IMG/VR virus record: IMGVR_UViG_3300005289_000016
Coordinates: 124,001 to 188,000 of that record
Direction: 5' to 3' (one strand)
DNA length: 64,000 nt
How positions within the stretch are numbered: the first letter of the stretch is position 1; each line of letters begins with the position of its first letter. Shown here piece after piece: positions 43,138-64,000 of the stretch. The translations under genes and the position numbers were made by a program. Under the pieces are notes generated by a model, which saw nothing but the letters and a program-made list of their open reading frames with translations, had not been told where the DNA came from and searched no databases.

Positions 43138-43586
43138 CGGGACAAATCAAACTGTTTGAGGAGTTGACCATCTTCGATGCAGCCGATCCATTCACGGATG
43201 CGCCACGTCACAATGGCGTAACGTGGGTTACCCTGCCTAACAGCGCAGGCATCATCGACAATGAAGTGACTTCTCTTGTCCCTGACGACTTTGTGCCGAT
43301 TTACATGAACTGGCCAAAGCGTGACTGGGGTGATGAACCTATTGGCGAGTTCTATAACAAGCTCAAGGTCCGTCAGATCGGCGTCATGCGAGTCACGGCG
43401 CTGGTGAAAGAAAAAGAAAACTGGGTATTACATGGGAAGGTCAGCTACAACGCCGGCGATGCCGTGGACAGTACGTTGCTGACCCATCCATACCCCATTA
43501 TTCAAAGTGTCGACATCGAACGAGGCGATCCTACAAAAGGCCGTCGAGCAATTCGACTTGACCGCTTGATGGTAAACCTAAAGTGA
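43134..43586 (+). CDS. hypothetical protein
   Basis: ATGA overlap. Confidence 0.75.
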   Translation: MTGQIKLFEELTIFDAADPFTDAPRHNGVTWVTLPNSAGIIDNEVTSLVPDDFVPIYMNWPKRDWGDEPIGEFYNKLKVRQIGVMRVTALVKEKENWVLHGKVSYNAGDAVDSTLLTHPYPIIQSVDIERGDPTKGRRAIRLDRLMVNLK

Positions 43587-43600
43587 GTTAGGAGCGCACC

Positions 43601-45640
43601 ATGGACAACCGCATCGAAGCTCTGCGAGCAGAGATCAGTCGTCTGAACCACCTCTATTACAACGAGGGGGAATCAGACGTTGATGATGACGTATACGACT
43701 CCCTCAAAGCTGAGTTGCGCGAGCTTGAAGGGGTAAGTGATGATCCGCTGTCGCCCTTGAACCAAGTGGGTGCGACGGCAGTAGGGGGCTTTGATAAAAT
43801 CAAGCACCTAACACCGATGTTGAGCTTGGGCAACGTCTACAACGAAGAAGAACTGACAGACTGGTGTCTTGGTTTGGGCTACGCTGCCTTTGCGCAGATG
43901 GAACTCAAGCACGACGGTCTGGCGATTGGCCTTCTGTACGACAAAACCAAGCTGAAGTACGCTGCTACCCGTGGCGATGGTGATATTGGTGATGACATCA
44001 CCGAGAATGCCGTGTATTTCGAAGGTGTTCCGGAAGAACTGCCTGAGTTCCCGGGTAAAGTCGAGATCCGGGGTGAAGCCGTCGTACCGCACAAGCACTT
44101 CAAGCGTGTTTGTGAGCTGCGTGAGGCTCAAGGCAAGAAGGTTTACGCCAACCCACGTAACATGGTGGCCGGATTGGCCCGCAAGAAGGAAGGTGCCGAC
44201 CTGATAGGCATGGGGATTCGCTTCATTGCCTACGATGCAGTGGTTCATACCCCTGTCGGACCGATTTCAGTGCCCATGTCGTACTTCAGTCCTGAAGTTC
44301 AGGCTCGGTTCCACATCTCCCTGCCAGTTTGGGAAGGGTTGACCAGCGATATTGGCAACATCATCGAGACAATCGAGGATGTCACCGAGGATCGCCCCAA
44401 CTTAGGACACGACATCGACGGCTTGGTGATCAAACTGGTCAAACCAGCTGAGCGTCAGACCCTCGGACAGCGCTCTACGTCTCCTCGGTGGGCTACAGCG
44501 TTCAAGTTTGAGGCTCAGACTGCCACAACGATCCTGGAAAGTGTCGAAGTGCAGGTCGGTCGGACTGGTGTATTGACTCCGGTGGCTAAAATCCGTCCAG
44601 TGAAGCTTTGTGGCGTGACGATCTCGTCTGTCACCCTGCACAACTTCGAGGAAATCGAGCGTCTTGACTTGCGGATTGGCGATACCGTGGTGGTTTCTCG
44701 TCGTGGTGACGTGATTCCGAAGATCGAGAGCGTGGTGATTGCGCTGCGGGTCGATGAACACGGTGTAGTTCGCACTCCAGTTGAGTGTCCGTGCTGTGGA
44801 TCGAAGGTGACCAAGCGGGATGTGGGCAAAGAGGAGGGGGTGAAGCTGTTCTGCACCAACTTGATCAACTGTCCAGCCCAGCTTATCAACCGGATGGCGT
44901 ACTTCGTCAGCCGCGATGGCATCGACGTGAAGAACTTAGGACCTGCTGCGGTTGAATCGCTGATCGCCACCGGGGTTCTGGGCTCGTTCAGCTCGTTGTT
45001 CTACCTGTCCGAGCAGGATTTCTACGCTGCGGGTATAGGTGAGGCCATGACGGACAAGATCATTGCTGGTCTGAACCGTTGCAAGAAGCTGCCGTTCTAC
45101 AAAGCACTGCGGGCTGTGGGGATTCCCGACGTCGGAGACAGCACTGCACGTGCCTTGGCTCAACGTTTCCCAAGCTTCCGTGATCTTGGCAAGGCCAGCT
45201 TCAAGACCTTGCAGGAAGTAGACGACGTAGGTCCTGCCGTAGCGACCAGCATCATGCTGACGTACATCGCCAACGACAGTGATCTGCATGCGCTCGACAG
45301 TATCTTCACATACACCGACGTGGCTATTCCGAAAGCAGCAGTTCAGGACCTTGCCGGTAAGACGGTCGTGGTCAGTGGCTCTGACTTCGATGGCATGACT
45401 CGTCGGGCGATGGAAGACGATGTGTTCTCACGGGGCGGTAAGCTGACCAAGAGCGTGAGCAAGAACACTGACATCCTCTATGCAGGGATTGGTGCTGGAC
45501 CTGACAAAGTCAGGAAGGCCAAGGAGCTGGGTTTCATCGAAGATGGGATCAAGTTCACCAACCCTAACTCTCTTACCACGCTGTCCTCAACCGACAACGG
45601 ACTTACACCTATCGCAACAGGAGATACCGATGAGCAATGA
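43601..45640 (+). CDS. ligA: NAD+-dependent DNA ligase
   Basis: YY..G.S.V.D..YD, PMLSL, ELKHDG (KxDG), EIRGE, NPRN..AG, DIDGLVIK, QVGRTG..TPVA, CPCCGS..C....CPAQ zinc finger, BRCT-like SVSKNTD. Confidence 0.95.
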   Translation: MDNRIEALRAEISRLNHLYYNEGESDVDDDVYDSLKAELRELEGVSDDPLSPLNQVGATAVGGFDKIKHLTPMLSLGNVYNEEELTDWCLGLGYAAFAQMELKHDGLAIGLLYDKTKLKYAATRGDGDIGDDITENAVYFEGVPEELPEFPGKVEIRGEAVVPHKHFKRVCELREAQGKKVYANPRNMVAGLARKKEGADLIGMGIRFIAYDAVVHTPVGPISVPMSYFSPEVQARFHISLPVWEGLTSDIGNIIETIEDVTEDRPNLGHDIDGLVIKLVKPAERQTLGQRSTSPRWATAFKFEAQTATTILESVEVQVGRTGVLTPVAKIRPVKLCGVTISSVTLHNFEEIERLDLRIGDTVVVSRRGDVIPKIESVVIALRVDEHGVVRTPVECPCCGSKVTKRDVGKEEGVKLFCTNLINCPAQLINRMAYFVSRDGIDVKNLGPAAVESLIATGVLGSFSSLFYLSEQDFYAAGIGEAMTDKIIAGLNRCKKLPFYKALRAVGIPDVGDSTARALAQRFPSFRDLGKASFKTLQEVDDVGPAVATSIMLTYIANDSDLHALDSIFTYTDVAIPKAAVQDLAGKTVVVSGSDFDGMTRRAMEDDVFSRGGKLTKSVSKNTDILYAGIGAGPDKVRKAKELGFIEDGIKFTNPNSLTTLSSTDNGLTPIATGDTDEQ

Positions 45641-58087: not shown

Positions 58088-59341
58088 ATGGATCGCAAGG
58101 CTTCTATCAGCATCAACAACTTCGACAACCACATGGTCATCCGCATGAACGATGAGTCCAACCTCATCGACCACGTGCCGGCCATGGTGTACAAGGCTTC
58201 CATAGGTCGTCCTGGCATCATCATGGTCAAGGACCGTCCGAACTTCACCTTGCCTCAACTGCGTTTTGGCAAGCACAATGCCCGCGTCAAGCAGATCACC
58301 GCCAGCTACGACCGTTTCGGTAAAAGCAACGGCGTCCTGCTGCACGGTCTGAAGGGGTCGGGCAAGAGCCTGTTGGCAGAAGAACTGGGTAACTGGATGA
58401 TCGCGCAAGATCTGCCGGTCATCATGGTCACTGAACCCATGGGTGCTGAAGAACTGGGTATCATCATCAAGGCCATCGGTCCTTGCATGGTGTACTTCGA
58501 CGAGTTCGGCAAGACCTACAACGAGAAGGTCGAACGTGAGCGTCTGCTGCCGCTGTTCAGCGACACGTCGTTCCTGGGTGTGATGTTCGTCATCACTGGC
58601 AACGAAGCGGAAGAGTTCTCCGACTACCTGGTCAACCGTCCGCAGCGTTTCCGTTACAACATCGGTTTCGGCACGAGCATCGACCTCGAAACCCTCCACG
58701 ACATCATGTCCAAGATGCAGGTCTCCGAGCATCTGCACAAGGCGTTCGAAGCGTACGTGAAGCGCGAAAGCGGCAAGTTGAACTTCGACTCACTGCTCTG
58801 CGTCATCCGTGAATCGGCTGGCTGCAAAGACGCCATCGAAGTCGCCGACATGTGCGAAATCCTCAACGTGCCAGATTTCCCACGGATGCAGTGGTTCATC
58901 TCGCATGTTGAGGTTGTTGACACTCCGGAAGACTACGTGGGCTTCGGCTACATGATGCACGGTATCCGCCACGGCCGCGGCGACATGTCGATCAAGATCC
59001 AGGAATCTCGCCGTAATGCGGACGTCTCGTTCCTGAGCTTCGGCAACGCTAAGTCCGACCCGCTCCTTAAAGACGCGATGCTGCACATCGAGAACCTCGA
59101 AGAGTCGGAAGGCACTCGCGTGGTCGAGTACAAGGGGCTTCGTACGTTCCGCATCACGCTGACCTACGGCTTTGAGTACAACAGCTCTACGCTCAACCTG
59201 TCCGCTGTTGACTCGTTCAACGAGAAGGACGAAAACAAACTTCCTGGCATCGGGCGCATGCACAGCGAGTCGGTTGTCGTTGACAGCGGTGAACAGGCTG
59301 CCATGTCGGGTAAGCACATCCACGGCCAACGCATCAATTAA
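58088..59341 (+). CDS. AAA+ ATPase
   Basis: Walker A GVLLHGLKGSGKS, Walker B MVYFDE, sensor/SRH FVITGN...NRPQRF. Confidence 0.88.
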   Translation: MDRKASISINNFDNHMVIRMNDESNLIDHVPAMVYKASIGRPGIIMVKDRPNFTLPQLRFGKHNARVKQITASYDRFGKSNGVLLHGLKGSGKSLLAEELGNWMIAQDLPVIMVTEPMGAEELGIIIKAIGPCMVYFDEFGKTYNEKVERERLLPLFSDTSFLGVMFVITGNEAEEFSDYLVNRPQRFRYNIGFGTSIDLETLHDIMSKMQVSEHLHKAFEAYVKRESGKLNFDSLLCVIRESAGCKDAIEVADMCEILNVPDFPRMQWFISHVEVVDTPEDYVGFGYMMHGIRHGRGDMSIKIQESRRNADVSFLSFGNAKSDPLLKDAMLHIENLEESEGTRVVEYKGLRTFRITLTYGFEYNSSTLNLSAVDSFNEKDENKLPGIGRMHSESVVVDSGEQAAMSGKHIHGQRIN

Positions 59342-59754: not shown

Positions 59755-60279
59755 ATGACTGCTATTGTGTACCATGATGGGAAGTTGATCGGCGACCGCA
59801 AGCAGGTGGCCTTAACGATACCTACAGCATTCGAAGACGGTCCTAAGGTCTTCATCAGCCGCGATAAGCAATTCGCTTACGGTGCCACTGGCTCCGCCAT
59901 CCATGATTCCATTCGTGACGAATTGGAAGCACAACTCCGTATGGTTCTTGAACGTCTGGTCCTGGACAAACGAGACGTTGTTCCTCTTGCTGACATCATG
60001 GGTGACGACAAGATTGAATGCTTCACCCACGGCACCGTGATGACGCGTGACCATCAATGGGGCATCATGTCCTACGGTTCTCGCTTTCGTCGCTTAGAAG
60101 GCCATACACACGGCGTAGGGACGGGTGGGACACTGCTGGCCTCCATGTTGGTCTGCGGTATGTCGCTCAAAGACGCCATGCCTGTTGTAGAACGTCTGGA
60201 TCACTTGACCGGCACGAAGGTTGATGTGATTTACGCAAGCCGACTCAAGCCATTTGTTATCAAAGGGACGCCACTGTGA
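59755..60279 (+). CDS. HslV/proteasome-beta-like Ntn hydrolase
   Basis: M-T start (Thr1), ..DG..IGD, downstream K (GPKVF), GVGTGG (GSG motif), D..TG. Confidence 0.6.
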   Translation: MTAIVYHDGKLIGDRKQVALTIPTAFEDGPKVFISRDKQFAYGATGSAIHDSIRDELEAQLRMVLERLVLDKRDVVPLADIMGDDKIECFTHGTVMTRDHQWGIMSYGSRFRRLEGHTHGVGTGGTLLASMLVCGMSLKDAMPVVERLDHLTGTKVDVIYASRLKPFVIKGTPL

Positions 60280-60869
60280 ACTTCCTAATCTATCGCCGCG
60301 GCAAGATCGGTTTCCCTGAAACTCACCATGCCAACGAAGGGGTGCATTTCAAAGTGCTCGAGGCCGACCCTGACACCTACTTCAGTGATCAGGGCTTCAT
60401 CTATCCGCTGTCGGGCACCGGACCTAACATTGCGGACGTTGTCAGCGGACGTCTGCGCATGGCCAACCACCCTCGTGTCTCGATGAGCATGATGGCTTTC
60501 ATGATCACCAAGCAAGGGGCGATCACGCAAGTCGACATCTTCAAGAACAACACTCATCCGGATGAGAAACGCTGGACGTTGGACTTCCATGGGTTGCCTA
60601 AGGGCAATTCCACGTACGTCATGTGCTCAGACACCATGACTCGTGACTCGTTGTTGGGTGCACTGGCCGCGTGGAAGGATGAGGAGAAGTTCCAGAAGGA
60701 CACCAACGCCATGTCGGTCGCTTCAAATTATCCGATCGTGTGGTTTACTGTGGAAGAGATCATTGAACGTCTCAATAAACTCTACCCAGAGACCAACACC
60801 AAAGATGACGAAGACAACACTGCCTCCGGTCACCGCCGTCCCCGTAATCGGCCTCTCCCCCGACGGTAA
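60276..60869 (+). CDS. hypothetical protein (possible degenerate Ntn paralogue)
   Basis: GTGA-coupled to the Ntn gene; MNFLIYRRGK start echoes MTAIVYHDGK. Confidence 0.75.
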   Translation: MNFLIYRRGKIGFPETHHANEGVHFKVLEADPDTYFSDQGFIYPLSGTGPNIADVVSGRLRMANHPRVSMSMMAFMITKQGAITQVDIFKNNTHPDEKRWTLDFHGLPKGNSTYVMCSDTMTRDSLLGALAAWKDEEKFQKDTNAMSVASNYPIVWFTVEEIIERLNKLYPETNTKDDEDNTASGHRRPRNRPLPRR

Positions 60870-60934
60870 AATCACCATCACTTACAGGCCCATAAGCACA
60901 CCGGGTAAATAAATACGTTTTGCTCGTGATCTAT

Positions 60935-61810
60935 GTAGTAGCACTGTGACATCATCCAAGGATAGTGCCATTGTTCGGATCGTTCTTAGGTTCCGTGCGC
61001 CGCATCTGGTCGTCACTACAACGTCTTCTAAAGGCCGTGTCACTCGTGACGCCGCCGAATGAGACGGACGACCCGCCGCGCATTACCGGGACCGTTACAT
61101 CCGTTTCAGTGACTTCGGTGCCCTACCTCACGCATAAGGCGCGTGGAACGGTAGGTGCACCGTAGCACTGGAGACCTAAAATTACTGAGCGCCCATACCC
61201 TGCCCTCTAAGGAGCTACACGATCAGATCCCTTCGCGGCGCCGCCGTGTTGGCTTTGCTTACCTTGTCAGTCGCCCTGTCGGTACAGGCGGAACCTCAAA
61301 AGGACCGCTACCAGGACAAGGCCGTTACTGCGACGTCCGATAAGTCATTTCCTCACCACTCGACACTAGGTCTGTTGAGGGCTGTGCCATCCGTGGCGCG
61401 GTTAGAGGGAGTGCTCTTCATGGCACGTGAGTCGCAGCGACGGATAGCGACAGCTACGACCGGGAAGCCCAGCACGGGCACTGATAGGACTATCCAGCGC
61501 GTGCCTAAGGTGCACGTCGGCTGATCAATAGTCTGAGTTCAGTGAACTACATTGATGACTATTGATTCCGATTGAGTTCGGTTAAATTGGATGGCAATGG
61601 CCTCCAGTCTGATACTGACCTACGACTAAGTAACACAAGGCCTCGCACAATGCGAAGACGCGCTTGGTGAAAGGCCTCGGGGGATGAGGACGACAAGCGC
61701 TACACAGGGTTACGGGGCATCGTCGATAGTCGTTCCTATGGTGGGGTTGATCTCCCATTGAGGTGCGTCCGAACGATTGCCCCAAGACTTCTCTTTCTTT
61801 TTTTTGTTTT
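60935..61810 (+). ncRNA. candidate large structured non-coding RNA (about 870 nt)
   Basis: About 980-nt gap without a credible gene; starts at TATG; many nested helices; ends in a stem plus long U-tract. Confidence 0.6.
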
Positions 61811-61850
61811 GCCGGGGTACCAATCCTATAGTTACCATTTGAGGTGTCCC

Positions 61851-62153
61851 ATGTCTCTTGTTCAGATCTCTACCGCTTACGCCAATTCAAGTCCTCCAGG
61901 GCACCGGGATAACCCAGAACGCTGGATGGCTGCCCGTATCACCGCTAGTCACATGAACACCATGTTGCAGCTTATCAAGAAGTCATCCTTCGATAAGCTC
62001 TCTGGTGAAGAGTTCGACTCTGCCAAGCACCTGATGAAAACCATCCAAGGGGCTGCTGGCATCTTCATTGACGCACTGCATACCGCAGATAGCATTGACC
62101 AGCTCATTGACATCAACAATGAGTTCTACAAGATGGCCTGCACCAAATGCTGA
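61851..62153 (+). CDS. hypothetical protein
   Basis: GAGGT RBS before MSLVQ. Confidence 0.75.
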   Translation: MSLVQISTAYANSSPPGHRDNPERWMAARITASHMNTMLQLIKKSSFDKLSGEEFDSAKHLMKTIQGAAGIFIDALHTADSIDQLIDINNEFYKMACTKC

Positions 62154-62156
62154 CAT

Positions 62157-62185
62157 AGAGCCCGGGGAATCCCCGGGCTCTTTTG
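62157..62185 (+). terminator. rho-independent terminator
   Basis: AGAGCCCGGGG-AAT-CCCCGGGCTCT-TTT. Confidence 0.85.
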
Positions 62186-62264
62186 CCGTCTCGATTCGAT
62201 TCGAAATATTTTCAACAATACATGATTCCGATGAATAACCTACCCTGATCATTGGAGATCAAAC

Positions 62265-62591
62265 ATGAACCTGCTCGCTAAAGCTGTAGAATTGAAAGCC
62301 GCTCAAGAAGCTGCTAAACCAGTTGAGAAAGTATCTCTGCTGGCCCGTATCAAAGCTTACTTCCGTAAGCGTGCTGGCAAGAAAGCATACGAGGCTCTGA
62401 AACAAGCCAAGCGTGAAGAGAAAGCCCAACTGGCTCTCACCAACGCTGAACGTGCTGACTTGCTGGACAAAGAATCCGATGAGCTGATCATGCAGTCCAT
62501 CGGCGTGAAAGACAAAGCCAAGGTTGACGAACTGATTGAACTGGCTACTGCCAAGTCGATCGAAGCCGCTTCCCTGCGCGTAGCATTTTAA
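62265..62591 (+). CDS. Lys/Ala-rich helical protein
   Basis: GGAG RBS; highly biased codons. Confidence 0.85.
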   Translation: MNLLAKAVELKAAQEAAKPVEKVSLLARIKAYFRKRAGKKAYEALKQAKREEKAQLALTNAERADLLDKESDELIMQSIGVKDKAKVDELIELATAKSIEAASLRVAF

Positions 62592-62617
62592 TCCCCCGGA
62601 ACTGAAGGAGTTTCATC

Positions 62618-63337
62618 ATGGAAAAGCAAGTAGCCGTAATCGTTGGTGTTGGTGCTGTAGCCGCTGCTCTGGTTGGCGGTCTGGGTTGGAAGACTCTGAA
62701 GAACCGCACTGGCAGTGACAAACTGTCCCAAGAGGCCATGGACCAGCGCAAAGAAGAACTGCGTGCTCGTCTGGCAAACAAGATCACCCAGCCTGTAGAA
62801 GTACAGGTAGTTCACAAGGAAGCTGACCTCAGCACTCTGCGTGAAAGCGGTGTTCCAGTGTTGGCAAACATTGCCAGCCTGTTGGTCGAGACCACCGAAG
62901 CACCAACCATGGATCAGGTGGTGCAAACCATCCTCCATGCAGAAACACCTAAGGACATCGTCGAGGTGATCGAAGGTGCTCACGGTGAGAAGGTCGTCAG
63001 CATCTCCCGTCCTCGGGCGGTGACTGCTCCTGTACAACCCGATCAGACTCCGATGTTCTGGAGTTCGTTCGTGACCAAATTGCGTCGTCCCGATGTCATC
63101 GAGATGTCTTCGAAGGACTTCGATACGCGCAATGGAGACTTGGCTCGTGGGTACCACAAATGCCGCGTGGATGGCGTTGATGGTGTTCTGCACGTGACCA
63201 AGTCCAACGTCTCTGCCGTGCTGCACATGGGCGGAGATGAGTTCACCGGCATCAGTACTTCGGGTAGTCGCTTCAATGGCAAAGGGTTGGTTAACCTGAA
63301 CCATGAGCAAGCGAAGAACTTCTTGACCGGTCGTTGA
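62618..63337 (+). CDS. N-terminally membrane-anchored protein
   Basis: VAVIVGVGAVAAALVGGLGW TM segment; AAGGAG RBS. Confidence 0.85.
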   Translation: MEKQVAVIVGVGAVAAALVGGLGWKTLKNRTGSDKLSQEAMDQRKEELRARLANKITQPVEVQVVHKEADLSTLRESGVPVLANIASLLVETTEAPTMDQVVQTILHAETPKDIVEVIEGAHGEKVVSISRPRAVTAPVQPDQTPMFWSSFVTKLRRPDVIEMSSKDFDTRNGDLARGYHKCRVDGVDGVLHVTKSNVSAVLHMGGDEFTGISTSGSRFNGKGLVNLNHEQAKNFLTGR

Positions 63338-63405
63338 TATACCGCCATAATGGCACTTCACCATAACCCGGGACTCTGAGGGTCCCACTTGCAAGAGGCT
63401 TTACC

Positions 63406-63777
63406 ATGCGTCCTTTGAAACAAGCAATCTACTCCAGCCGTACTGCTGACAAGTTCGTTGTTCGTCTGCCTGATGGCATGCGTGAACGTATCGCAGAGGT
63501 TGCTAGGGATCACCATCGCTCAATGAACAGCGAGATCATTGCTCGCTTAGAGAAGAGCCTGGACCTGCCGGACGCTGAAGTGTTTGAAGTAGAAGCCCCG
63601 GAGGGTTCCATCTGGAATCCTTCCCTTCACAACTTGGTTCGTACCAAGGGTGGACAAATGGGCACTATCACGGAGTTCCGTGAAGTGTACAACAAGACAG
63701 CCGTCATCCAGGCTAAATTGGATCATCTGCATTGGCATGATCTCGGTGACTTGAAGCCGGTGTTTGTCAAAGCGTAA
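63406..63777 (+). CDS. amrZ: AmrZ (AlgZ)-like Arc/ribbon-helix-helix transcription regulator
   Basis: [52 protein letters not shown] is near-identical to the Pseudomonas AmrZ N-terminal domain as I recall it; C-terminal half unrelated. Confidence 0.9.
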
Positions 63778-63783
63778 CGGAAT

Positions 63784-63830
63784 AGATCAGGGACCTTCGG
63801 GTCCCTGATCTTTAGTTCCTTTTTTCTTTG
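63784..63830. terminator. bidirectional UUCG terminator
   Basis: AGATCAGGGACC-TTCG-GGTCCCTGATCT plus T-tract, between convergent genes. Confidence 0.88.
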
Positions 63831-64000
63831 TTACCAACGCATGGTCGCTGACTTTCCTTTGACCGTGACCTTCTTGCCTTTGAGCCAGTCTTTCAGATCC
63901 ACCAACTCACAGCTATCAATCATCTTCGAGCCAATGACCGACTTGGTCTTGTACTCGTTGCTCATGCCGTTGTGCAGGTTGTCCACCTTGACCCACATGG
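63831..64000 (-). CDS. partial CDS (3' end), runs off the window
   Basis: ...MWVKVDNLHNGMSNEYKTKSVIGSKMIDSCELVDLKDWLKGKKVTVKGKSATMRW-stop. Confidence 0.65.
   Translation of the reverse strand, partial: MWVKVDNLHNGMSNEYKTKSVIGSKMIDSCELVDLKDWLKGKKVTVKGKSATMRW

What the first reader, a model, noticed from the sequence alone, without database searches (positions are those of the whole stretch)
63406..63777. Captured AmrZ DNA-binding domain with a replaced C-terminus
Seen: the first about 52 aa are near-identical to Pseudomonas AmrZ; the IYSS/PDG/RERI variant resembles fluorescens/syringae-group alleles as I recall them. The remainder is unrelated to the host oligomerisation domain. Established: AmrZ controls alginate, motility (fleQ), c-di-GMP genes and represses type I-F CRISPR-Cas, and mobile-element AmrZ homologues have been reported to repress CRISPR-Cas. 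Inference: a chimeric mimic that reprograms or poisons the AmrZ regulon (surface receptors, biofilm, immunity). It also points to the host genus.
Basis: partly seen in the sequence, partly recalled or inferred. Interest (0 to 1): 0.72.

Follow-up and report, generated by a model that had tools for sequence, protein, structure and literature searches.

The report
Jumbo-phage AmrZ look-alike regulator
A giant Pseudomonas phage carries a small DNA-binding protein whose DNA-reading head is almost identical to the host's master regulator AmrZ but whose tail is a different, self-sticking barrel; related phage proteins are already known to switch host genes off, so this is a new member of a known kind.

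Summary
ORF 63406..63777 (+) encodes 123 aa. Residues 1-52 are an Arc/AmrZ ribbon-helix-helix head, 50/52 identical to AmrZ of fluorescens-group Pseudomonas and 47/52 to P. aeruginosa AmrZ. The rest shows no similarity to the AmrZ tail.

It is not a one-off or recent capture. Synonymous sites against host amrZ are saturated, and gene GC equals the phage's. Full-length homologues sit in the same gene neighbourhood on many 250-277 kb phage contigs.

The tail (aa ~66-123) is a small SH3/Tudor-like beta-barrel, whereas the host tail is predicted helical. It is predicted to self-associate (ipSAE 0.91, best control 0.21) through its conserved residues. It is the most divergent, mosaic part of the locus.

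The tail is shared with SM1 gp115, which I infer to be the type of PhiPA1019 Gp53, an early phage regulator shown in 2026 to repress fleQ, pslA, amrZ and ftsZ. The PaBG homologue was shown to repress type I-F CRISPR-Cas.

The phage encodes chimallin, tubulin and a multisubunit RNA polymerase. It is therefore probably nucleus-forming, which weakens CRISPR evasion as the selective reason.

Best reading: a host-directed AmrZ mimic with its own oligomerisation module. This is a new member of a known kind, of moderate interest.

The parts
63406..63777 (+). Gene for the 123-aa AmrZ-like protein (stop codon included)
   Evidence: ORF list and sequence. Pfam Arc E = 3.6e-22. phrog_38161 'Arc-like transcriptional regulator' E = 5e-24 over aa 9-91.
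63406..63561 (+). Ribbon-helix-helix head with extended N-terminal arm (aa 1-52), near-identical to Pseudomonas AmrZ
   Evidence: 3qoq match E = 1.2e-22. It is 50/52 identical to fluorescens-group AmrZ. K16, V18 and R20, the equivalents of AmrZ K18, V20 and R22 (PMC3325190), are invariant in the phage family. omega is 0.05-0.16 among phages.
63562..63600 (+). Linker (aa 53-65), acidic, partly conserved (VEVxAPEG)
   Evidence: Alignment A1. Low model confidence. Residues 60-67 lie in the predicted interface.
63601..63774 (+). C-terminal small beta-barrel domain (aa ~66-123), predicted self-association module; conserved W70, P72, V78, I88, P118
   Evidence: AF2 pLDDT is 85-88, with strands at 77-79, 85-94, 100-105 and 109-112. 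Fold matches to SH3/Tudor-like barrels are weak. No similarity to the host AmrZ tail. Four copies score ipSAE 0.91 against a best control of 0.21. Homologous to the tail of SM1 gp115, E = 8e-10. It is the most diverged segment of the locus.
63323..63351 (+). Sigma-70-like promoter match, TTGACC-17 nt-CATAAT (10 of 12); function unproven
   Evidence: Consensus scan. The -35 lies inside the 3' end of the upstream ORF, so its conservation is uninformative. The element is present in window, L004 and L005 only.
63344..63354 (.). Perfect 11-bp palindrome GCC-ATAAT-GGC overlapping the -10; candidate operator
   Evidence: It is the only GCC-W5-GGC in the 64-kb window (expected 0.17) and in the whole 276-kb genome. 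The amrZ1 operator is GGC-AAAAC-GCC with the same 8-bp half-site spacing but the opposite half-site order (PMC3325190). It is absent in the closest relatives L090 and L094.
63370..63386 (+). 7-bp stem-loop 20 nt upstream of the start codon
   Evidence: RNA fold. Conserved in five related phages, and replaced at the same position by a different hairpin (GCGGC...GCCGC) in L095.
63785..63810 (.). 11-bp-stem hairpin with TTCG loop followed by a T-rich tract, lying between this gene and the convergent downstream gene; likely terminator
   Evidence: Read directly from the sequence. The consensus scan did not list it. The downstream gene on the minus strand starts at 63831.

Best explanation
The gene encodes a phage transcription factor that copies the DNA-reading head of the host global regulator AmrZ and joins it to a phage-specific beta-barrel tail. 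The head should form the usual intertwined ribbon-helix-helix dimer and read the same 5'-GGC half-sites as AmrZ. The tail should link dimers into a higher-order assembly, probably four subunits. That is the job done in the host protein by an unrelated helical tail. The protein is made during infection of fluorescens-group Pseudomonas by a nucleus-forming jumbo phage. It most likely occupies AmrZ operators on the host chromosome (fleQ and motility, exopolysaccharide, c-di-GMP and pilus genes, amrZ itself, possibly defence genes), independently of the host's AlgU-controlled AmrZ supply. Shown here: the two-domain anatomy, conservation of the DNA-contact residues, family-wide conservation and synteny, old origin, and predicted tail self-association. 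Inferred: DNA specificity, host targets, timing and benefit to the phage.
For: The head is 50/52 identical to host AmrZ and the base-contacting K/V/R residues are invariant. Purifying selection on the head is very strong although synonymous sites are saturated against host amrZ (pS 0.65-0.79; omega 0.05-0.16 among phages). This fits a need to keep reading the same operators. Full-length homologues occur on many 250-277 kb contigs in the same gene order. The tail is a confident beta-barrel and is predicted to self-associate at ipSAE 0.91 against a best control of 0.21. At the tool's calibration that mark was reached by 20 of 30 proteins solved as pairs and 1 of 23 solved as single chains. The conserved WNP and C-terminal KPxxxK stretches lie in the interface. 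The host tail is predicted helical and is known to mediate tetramerisation (Xu 2016 as cited). Relatives have been tested. PhiPA1019 Gp53 is early, binds and represses fleQ, pslA, amrZ and ftsZ, and behaves differently from AmrZ (PMC13650114). Its 126-aa length and its Arg15/Asn36 numbering fit SM1 gp115, whose tail matches ours at E = 8e-10. The PaBG homologue complemented an amrZ deletion and repressed Csy. GGC-N5-GCC sites are not enriched on the phage DNA (19 found, 15.6 expected). The phage DNA is probably enclosed in a chimallin shell and transcribed by phage polymerases. Both points favour the host chromosome as the target.
Against: There is no expression, binding or phenotype data for this protein; no RNA runs hold the locus. 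The complex prediction is a model's confidence, made with my own shallow alignment and with four copies rather than the two used in calibration. Fold matches for the tail are weak (best Foldseek E about 0.05), so its role is not fixed by homology. Many nucleus-forming phages damage or shut down the host chromosome early, which would limit what a host-directed repressor can achieve. A unique palindrome at the gene's own upstream region hints at a phage-directed (autoregulatory) role as well.
Confidence: 0.6

Rival explanations
1. Its main role is repression of host CRISPR-Cas, or other defence genes under AmrZ control, as proposed for mobile-element AmrZ homologues.
For: The PaBG, phi3 and JBD68 homologues lowered Csy complex levels when over-expressed in P. 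aeruginosa PA14. The DNA-contact residues are the same here.
Against: The phage encodes chimallin, tubulin and its own RNA polymerase. From established knowledge, not tested here, nucleus-forming phages are shielded from DNA-targeting CRISPR-Cas. Transcriptional repression also acts slowly on Cas complexes that already exist in a lytic infection. The likely hosts are fluorescens-group strains, whose CRISPR content was not examined. The PaBG tail is only marginally related to this one (E = 0.11).
Confidence: 0.15
2. It is a dominant-negative poison. Its head forms mixed dimers with host AmrZ, and the foreign tail then prevents proper AmrZ tetramers, so AmrZ-activated and AmrZ-repressed genes are released.
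For: The heads differ at only 2 of 52 positions (35 and 50), neither in the beta-strand, so mixed dimers are physically plausible. The tails are unrelated in sequence and in predicted fold.
Against: This was not tested. The tail is conserved and predicted to self-associate, which suggests a working DNA-binding oligomer rather than a mere spoiler. Gp53 and the PaBG homologue act as active repressors, and five of six mobile homologues complemented an amrZ deletion.
Confidence: 0.1
3. It regulates the phage's own genes, through autorepression or a temporal switch, like Arc and Mnt of P22.
For: A perfect GCC-ATAAT-GGC palindrome, unique in the 276-kb genome, overlaps a -10-like hexamer 52 nt upstream of the start codon. 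It has the same half-site spacing as the amrZ1 operator. Host amrZ is itself autorepressed at such sites.
Against: The palindrome is present only in window, L004 and L005. It is missing in the closest protein relative L090 (85% identity) and in L094, L095, SM1 and PaBG. Its half-sites are in the opposite order to amrZ1. AmrZ-type site pairs are not enriched in the window. The protein would also have to enter the phage nucleus. The pattern was chosen after the palindrome had been seen.
Confidence: 0.12
4. It is an RHH antitoxin or a ParG/omega-type partition or centromere-binding protein.
For: RHH heads are common in both classes. Some PHROG and JGI names for relatives read 'partition protein' or 'plasmid stability protein'. 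There is a weak FitA-like RHH match at E = 2e-4, below the Pfam cut-off.
Against: No toxin or ParA-like gene is in an operon with it. It is the last gene of its cluster and the next gene is convergent. There are no PADLOC hits for it or its neighbours. The head is specifically AmrZ-like (96% identity), not generically RHH.
Confidence: 0.03

Closest known systems
Pseudomonas AmrZ (AlgZ), alginate and motility regulator; PDB 3qoq
   Same: The extended N-terminal arm and ribbon-helix-helix head are the same: 50/52 identical to fluorescens-group AmrZ and 47/52 to P. aeruginosa. The DNA-reading Lys, Val and Arg are kept. Both have a separate C-terminal domain that is shown (AmrZ) or predicted (this protein) to build higher oligomers.
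   Different: The tail is unrelated: no alignment at E <= 100, and beta-barrel versus helical. The gene is in a phage, not at the chromosomal AlgU-controlled locus. DNA identity is only 74-81%.
PhiPA1019 Gp53 (126 aa; Commun Biol 2026, PMC13650114), represented here by the same-size protein SM1 gp115
   Same: The two-domain plan is the same: an AmrZ-like RHH head plus a homologous beta-barrel tail (profile E = 8e-10, hmm positions 13-65). Gp53 is an early gene product that binds and represses fleQ, pslA, amrZ and ftsZ.
   Different: Its head is much less AmrZ-like (43% identity over aa 5-91). The phage is a 94-kb P. aeruginosa siphophage, not a nucleus-forming jumbo phage. I could not retrieve Gp53 itself. 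The link to SM1 gp115 rests on phage size, protein length and the Arg15/Asn36 numbering.
PaBG gp184 ('amrZ_PaBG'; Borges et al., bioRxiv 10.1101/673095) and Noxifer gp106
   Same: Both are jumbo Pseudomonas phage proteins with an AmrZ-like head (69-72% identity over the head) and a tail carrying the W-x-P...G...V and C-terminal P motifs. Among the mobile homologues tested in that study, the PaBG protein repressed Csy.
   Different: Their tails are only marginally matched by our tail profile (E = 0.11 and 0.014). The proteins are longer (138 and 146 aa) and sit in a different gene neighbourhood.
P22 Arc and Mnt repressors
   Same: They belong to the same RHH superfamily. Mnt also joins an RHH head to a separate C-terminal tetramerisation domain (established knowledge; weak matches).
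   Different: Sequence similarity is low (E 0.5-0.6). Mnt's tail is a coiled coil, and Arc and Mnt act on phage operators.
Small SH3/Tudor-like barrels (R67 dihydrofolate reductase, YodC/DUF2158, UvrD and Mfd Tudor-like domains)
   Same: The overall fold class of the tail is the same (TM by target 0.55-0.78 over about 50-60 residues). R67 DHFR is a homotetramer of such barrels.
   Different: All matches are weak (Foldseek E >= 0.05, identity 12-19%), and no catalytic or RNA-polymerase-binding motifs are shared. This is a resemblance of shape only.

Membership tests
Arc/MetJ ribbon-helix-helix superfamily (Pfam PF03869 Arc) | Profile match above the curated cut-off over the beta-strand/helix/helix unit | tested here: met
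   78.4 bits against a cut-off of 20.4, E = 3.6e-22, aa 11-53.
AmrZ orthologue | RHH head with the base-contacting residues Lys18, Val20 and Arg22 and the extended N-terminal arm | tested here: met
   K16, V18, R20 and residues 1-15 align with 3qoq and are invariant in the family. The roles of these residues come from PMC3325190.
AmrZ orthologue | C-terminal tetramerisation domain homologous to AmrZ residues ~67-108 | tested here: not met
   No BLASTP alignment at E <= 100. The host tail is predicted as two helices and this tail as a beta-barrel.
AmrZ orthologue | Chromosomal core gene of Pseudomonas | tested here: not met
   The gene lies in a 276-kb virus record that encodes chimallin, tubulin and phage RNA polymerase.
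AmrZ orthologue | Binds amrZ1-type operators (two 5'-GGC half-sites with an A/T linker) | not testable with these tools
   This needs EMSA or anisotropy. Only the conservation of the contact residues is shown.
Phage two-domain AmrZ-like regulators (phrog_38161; Gp53 / SM1 gp115 type) | Profile match that spans both the head and the tail | tested here: met
   phrog_38161 E = 5.1e-24 over aa 9-91. The tail profile hits SM1 gp115 at E = 8e-10.
Phage two-domain AmrZ-like regulators (phrog_38161; Gp53 / SM1 gp115 type) | Early expression and direct repression of the host fleQ, pslA, amrZ and ftsZ promoters | not testable with these tools
   Shown for Gp53 only (PMC13650114). No RNA runs hold this locus.
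Mobile-element AmrZ homologues that repress type I-F CRISPR-Cas (Borges et al.) | Lowers Csy/cas expression when expressed in Pseudomonas | not testable with these tools
   Shown for the PaBG, phi3 and JBD68 proteins. The phi3 protein is only 81 aa and has no barrel tail.
RHH antitoxin of a toxin-antitoxin pair | Co-oriented adjacent toxin gene in one operon | tested here: not met
   This is the last gene of its cluster and the next gene is convergent. There are no PADLOC hits.
SH3/Tudor-like small beta-barrel fold (tail only) | Significant structural match to members of the fold | tested here: inconclusive
   The best Foldseek E is 0.05-0.3 with TM by target up to 0.78. Atlas TM is 0.6-0.7 to YodC/DUF2158 and to unnamed barrels.

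The most novel reading that the evidence does not exclude
The barrel tail is an orthogonal, fast-turning-over oligomerisation cassette. It would let the phage build AmrZ-headed tetramers that do not mix through their tails with the host AmrZ pool or with those of co-infecting phages. Its allele swapping among otherwise near-identical phages would then reflect an arms race, with a host sensor of the mimic or with competitors. This would be the first case of a nucleus-forming phage steering the host chromosome from the cytoplasm with a copied host master regulator.
Probability: 0.15. Interest if true: 0.6.

Novelty: new member of a known kind. Interest (0 to 1): 0.4.

Why it matters
AmrZ sits at the hub of the motile-versus-biofilm decision in pseudomonads, including plant-associated fluorescens-group strains. 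Phage copies of its DNA-reading head show how viruses take over host regulation with minimal invention. This member adds three usable points. (1) The head is essentially the host's own, so it is a clean tool for asking what AmrZ-site occupancy alone does without the host tail. (2) The tail is a distinct, probably self-associating barrel that neither of the two experimental papers read here discusses (searches of both texts for 'C-terminal' found it only in reference lists or not at all). (3) The gene occurs in a nucleus-forming jumbo phage, where CRISPR evasion is a weak rationale, so another benefit has to be found. None of this overturns current understanding.

Tried and rejected
1. Recent capture from the host was rejected. 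The first 156 nt are only 74-81% identical to about 80 Pseudomonas amrZ genes. 19-33 of about 50 conserved codons differ (pS 0.65-0.79). GC3 is 0.52 against 0.58-0.63 in hosts, and there is no GC island.

2. A profile search with the tail against 1.8 billion representatives gave top hits in 300-2400-aa proteins with many matched stretches. These are WD40 repeats sharing an 'LWNPxTGQLL' strand-turn motif. I rejected them as repeat or composition artefacts. The real hits are small 65-140-aa proteins.

I removed them, together with the Noxifer row from the same kind of record, and compared those proteins only inside the closed script box.

4. For the promoter and operator idea, I aligned the upstream regions of nine relatives. 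The palindrome and the -10 are present in three phages only, so the idea is kept as a minor rival.

5. AmrZ-type site pairs are not enriched on the phage DNA.

6. Rfam found nothing in 60800-64000.

7. NCBIfam has no AmrZ-specific model. It gave only a sub-threshold TprA match, for both this protein and host AmrZ.

8. A search of sequencing runs found DNA metagenomes only (rhizosphere, compost, soil, sediment), so no reads were laid.

9. I did not attempt a tree of the 52-residue head, because there are too few variable sites.

Full report
**What is there.** The window is bases 124001-188000 of a 276,032-bp virus record that CheckV rates complete. ORF 63406..63777 (+) has an ATG start, an AAGAGG ribosome-binding site 7 nt upstream and a TAA stop, and it encodes 123 aa. 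It is the last gene of a plus-strand cluster. A 239-aa ORF of unknown function ends 68 nt upstream, and the next gene (from 63831) is convergent. Between the two convergent genes lies an 11-bp-stem hairpin with a TTCG loop and a T-rich tail (63785-63810, read).

**The head.**
- Residues 11-53 match Pfam Arc at 78 bits (cut-off 20.4).
- Residues 1-52 match the crystallised P. aeruginosa AmrZ (3qoq) at E = 1.2e-22. 47 of 52 aligned residues are identical and there is one 2-residue gap.
- A scan of one genome per prokaryote species returned 80 Pseudomonas loci, nearly all fluorescens-group species. Their AmrZ is 50/52 identical to the phage protein, differing only at N35D and Q50K; one species is 51/52.
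- The residues that read DNA in the AmrZ-operator crystal structure are Lys18, Val20 and Arg22, with Ser13 and Arg14 on the arm (PMC3325190). Here they are K16, V18, R20, S11 and R12, and they are invariant in all 38 aligned phage proteins.

**The tail.** Residues 53-123 give no alignment with host AmrZ even at E <= 100 and hit no Pfam family. An AlphaFold2 model built on 38 family members gives a confident small beta-barrel for residues ~70-120 (pLDDT 85-88). The head is poorly modelled as a monomer, as expected for an obligate intertwined dimer. The same method on 30 host AmrZ sequences gives an all-helical tail, with helices at 69-85 and 88-108 and pLDDT 86-92. 'Replaced C-terminus' is therefore right in both sequence and fold.

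Fold searches place the barrel among SH3/Tudor-like domains: R67 dihydrofolate reductase, UvrD and Mfd Tudor-like domains, the ribosomal eS4 KOW region, PetP and YodC/DUF2158. Every match is weak, with Foldseek E >= 0.05 and 12-19% identity. These matches give the fold class, not a function.

**It is a family, not a one-off chimera.** A search of 5.8 billion proteins found full-length homologues of 119-138 aa at 50-93% identity. Many lie on contigs of 250-277 kb from compost, soil and rhizosphere metagenomes. In the alignment, residues 9-48 are almost invariant, and the tail keeps W70, P72, V78, I88 and P118. Gene order is conserved in relatives: a 236-285-aa gene upstream and a convergent 155-aa gene downstream.

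A profile of the tail alone hits SM1 gp115, a 126-aa protein of a 93-kb P. aeruginosa siphophage, at E = 8e-10 over almost the whole domain. It hits Noxifer gp106 only at E = 0.014 and PaBG gp184 only at E = 0.11. Against 1.8 billion cluster representatives, the genuine hits are small proteins. Among the eight small ones whose sequences I retrieved, one 65-aa and one 96-aa protein (P0160, P0208) carry the barrel without the head. The many large hits are WD40 repeats that share an 'LWNPxTGQLL' motif, which I regard as an artefact. The phi3 homologue tested by Borges et al. is only 81 aa and has no barrel. At least two architectures of phage AmrZ-like proteins therefore exist.

**How old is the capture?**
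- The first 156 nt are only 74-81% identical to host amrZ genes, and 19-33 of about 50 identical-residue codons differ.
- Nei-Gojobori pS against six host genes is 0.65-0.79, which is saturated, while the proteins remain 96% identical.
- GC3 is 0.52 in the phage and 0.58-0.63 in hosts, and there is no compositional island.

The head was therefore acquired long ago, or has been exchanged only among phages, and it is held by very strong purifying selection: omega is 0.05-0.16 among phage pairs. One relative, L008, keeps the host-like linker start 'EQSLIQE' up to residue 57. This places the junction between host-derived and phage-specific parts near residues 57-60.

**Mosaicism.** Sliding identity against relatives shows that the tail is the most diverged part of the locus. 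Against L004, the upstream 260 nt and the head are 83-100% identical and the downstream region is 73-83% identical, but the tail is 35-58% identical. Against L090, the tail is 75-87% identical and the upstream intergenic region is only 65% identical. In the same gene pairs, synonymous divergence is deeper in the tail (0.8-1.8) than in the head (0.3-0.6). This points to exchange of tail alleles by recombination in the conserved head and linker, not only to relaxed constraint.

**What the tail may do.** Four copies of the tail, folded with my 27-row alignment, scored ipSAE 0.91 in three runs. The three controls, with one copy replaced by an unrelated protein, scored 0.00, 0.00 and 0.21. At the tool's calibration this mark was reached by 20 of 30 proteins solved as pairs and 1 of 23 solved as single chains. 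The tool warns that my own alignment and the four copies make these counts rough.

The scored copy touches two other copies extensively and the fourth by one residue, which indicates a compact four-subunit body. The interface, in protein numbering, includes residues 67-77 (with W70 and P72), 85-87 and 117-123 (with P118). These are the conserved positions. The model supports self-association but does not show it. Host AmrZ needs its own C-terminal domain for tetramerisation and function (Xu et al. 2016, cited; Pryor et al.). The simplest reading is that the barrel is an alternative oligomerisation module.

**What kind of phage.** The record encodes three markers of nucleus-forming jumbo phages:
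- a homologue of the phiKZ nuclear-shell protein gp54 (E = 2.4e-18, 24% identity over 516 residues);
- a tubulin (PF00091, above cut-off);
- a multisubunit RNA-polymerase beta-like protein (PF00562, above cut-off).

No cultured phage is close at the DNA level. The nearest by this protein are Noxifer (P. fluorescens SBW25), PaBG and others. From established knowledge, not tested here, such phages enclose their DNA in a protein shell that keeps out DNA-targeting CRISPR-Cas, and they transcribe with their own polymerases.

Two consequences follow. First, a cytoplasmic AmrZ-like protein meets the host chromosome rather than phage DNA unless it is imported. Second, repression of type I-F CRISPR-Cas is a weak selective reason here. 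In line with the first point, GGC-N5-GCC site pairs are not enriched in the window (19 found, 15.6 expected).

**Upstream signals.** A sigma-70-like match, TTGACC-17-CATAAT, lies at 63323-63351. Its -10 is overlapped by a perfect palindrome, GCC-ATAAT-GGC (63344-63354). This is the only GCC-W5-GGC in the window (expected 0.17) and in the whole genome. The amrZ1 operator is GGC-AAAAC-GCC, with the same centre-to-centre spacing but the reverse order of half-sites.

This suggests autoregulation, but several points weaken it. The element is present only in window, L004 and L005, and it is absent in L090 (85% protein identity), L094, L095, SM1 and PaBG. The -35 lies in coding sequence. I also chose the pattern after seeing the palindrome. 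I keep the idea as a minor rival.

A 7-bp hairpin 20 nt before the start codon is conserved in five phages and is replaced at the same place by a different hairpin in L095. Its role is unknown.

**Comparison with the known.** Phage and plasmid AmrZ homologues were reported by Borges et al. Fourteen mobile elements carried one, and five of six tested complemented an amrZ deletion. The PaBG, phi3 and JBD68 proteins lowered Csy levels. In October 2026, PhiPA1019 Gp53 was described. It is a 126-aa RHH protein of a 94-kb phage. It is an early gene product that binds 78 sites in PAO1 and represses fleQ, pslA, amrZ and ftsZ. It causes filamentation and is not interchangeable with AmrZ. Gp53's length and its Arg15/Asn36 numbering fit SM1 gp115, whose tail is homologous to ours. 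I could not fetch Gp53 itself.

[quoted passage not shown] The present protein is thus a new member of a known kind. It has an unusually host-identical head, a described-here barrel tail, and a nucleus-forming jumbo-phage setting.

**Verdict.** The most likely mechanism, at confidence 0.6, is a host-directed AmrZ mimic with its own oligomerisation module. The rivals are CRISPR or defence repression as the main role (0.15), phage autoregulation (0.12), a dominant-negative poison (0.10) and an antitoxin or partition protein (0.03). Interest is 0.4.

Noticed in passing
window 63370-63386 and 63790-63805: The only two GGGAC-N(3-9)-GTCCC hairpins in the 64-kb window (0.66 expected) bracket this gene. 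One lies 20 nt before the start codon and one 13 nt after the stop. This could mean transcript-end stabilisation or a cassette boundary.
   Followed up: partly
window 62786-62905 (inside ORF 62618..63337): The upstream 239-aa gene, which appears from its sequence to have an N-terminal hydrophobic segment, has a central stretch only 15-47% identical to L004 and L005. Its flanks are 85-97% identical. This is a second hypervariable patch next to the variable tail of the AmrZ-like gene.
   Followed up: no
window 58088-59341 and 59755-60279: An ATPase (phrog_2376, E = 6e-51) lies about 400 nt upstream of an HslV-family peptidase-like ORF (phrog_1040, E = 2e-10). This may be a phage-encoded HslUV-like protease pair.
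   Followed up: no
G000:C1:56871-58403, 43445-43864, 71784-72092 (outside the window): The genome has a homologue of the phiKZ nuclear-shell protein, a tubulin and a multisubunit RNA-polymerase beta-like gene, so the phage is probably nucleus-forming.
   Followed up: yes
G000:C1:263392-263402 (L093:1501-1511): This is the single canonical-orientation AmrZ-like site pair in the genome, GGC-AAAAT-GCC, one base different from amrZ1. It lies in the last codons of a 468-aa ORF, about 100 nt upstream of the next ORF.
   Followed up: partly
L008:4001-4405 (IMGVR_UViG_3300009011_000001, 248 kb): This relative's protein keeps the host AmrZ linker start (EQSLIQE) up to residue 57 before switching to a barrel tail. 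This marks the likely fusion junction.
   Followed up: partly
P0160 (65 aa) and P0208 (96 aa): These proteins carry the barrel domain without an RHH head, so the tail can exist as a stand-alone or differently fused module.
   Followed up: no
P0121-P0131 and similar (WD40-repeat proteins): The tail profile collects high summed scores on WD40 propellers through an 'LWNPxTGQLL' strand-turn motif. This is a trap for profile searches with this domain.
   Followed up: yes
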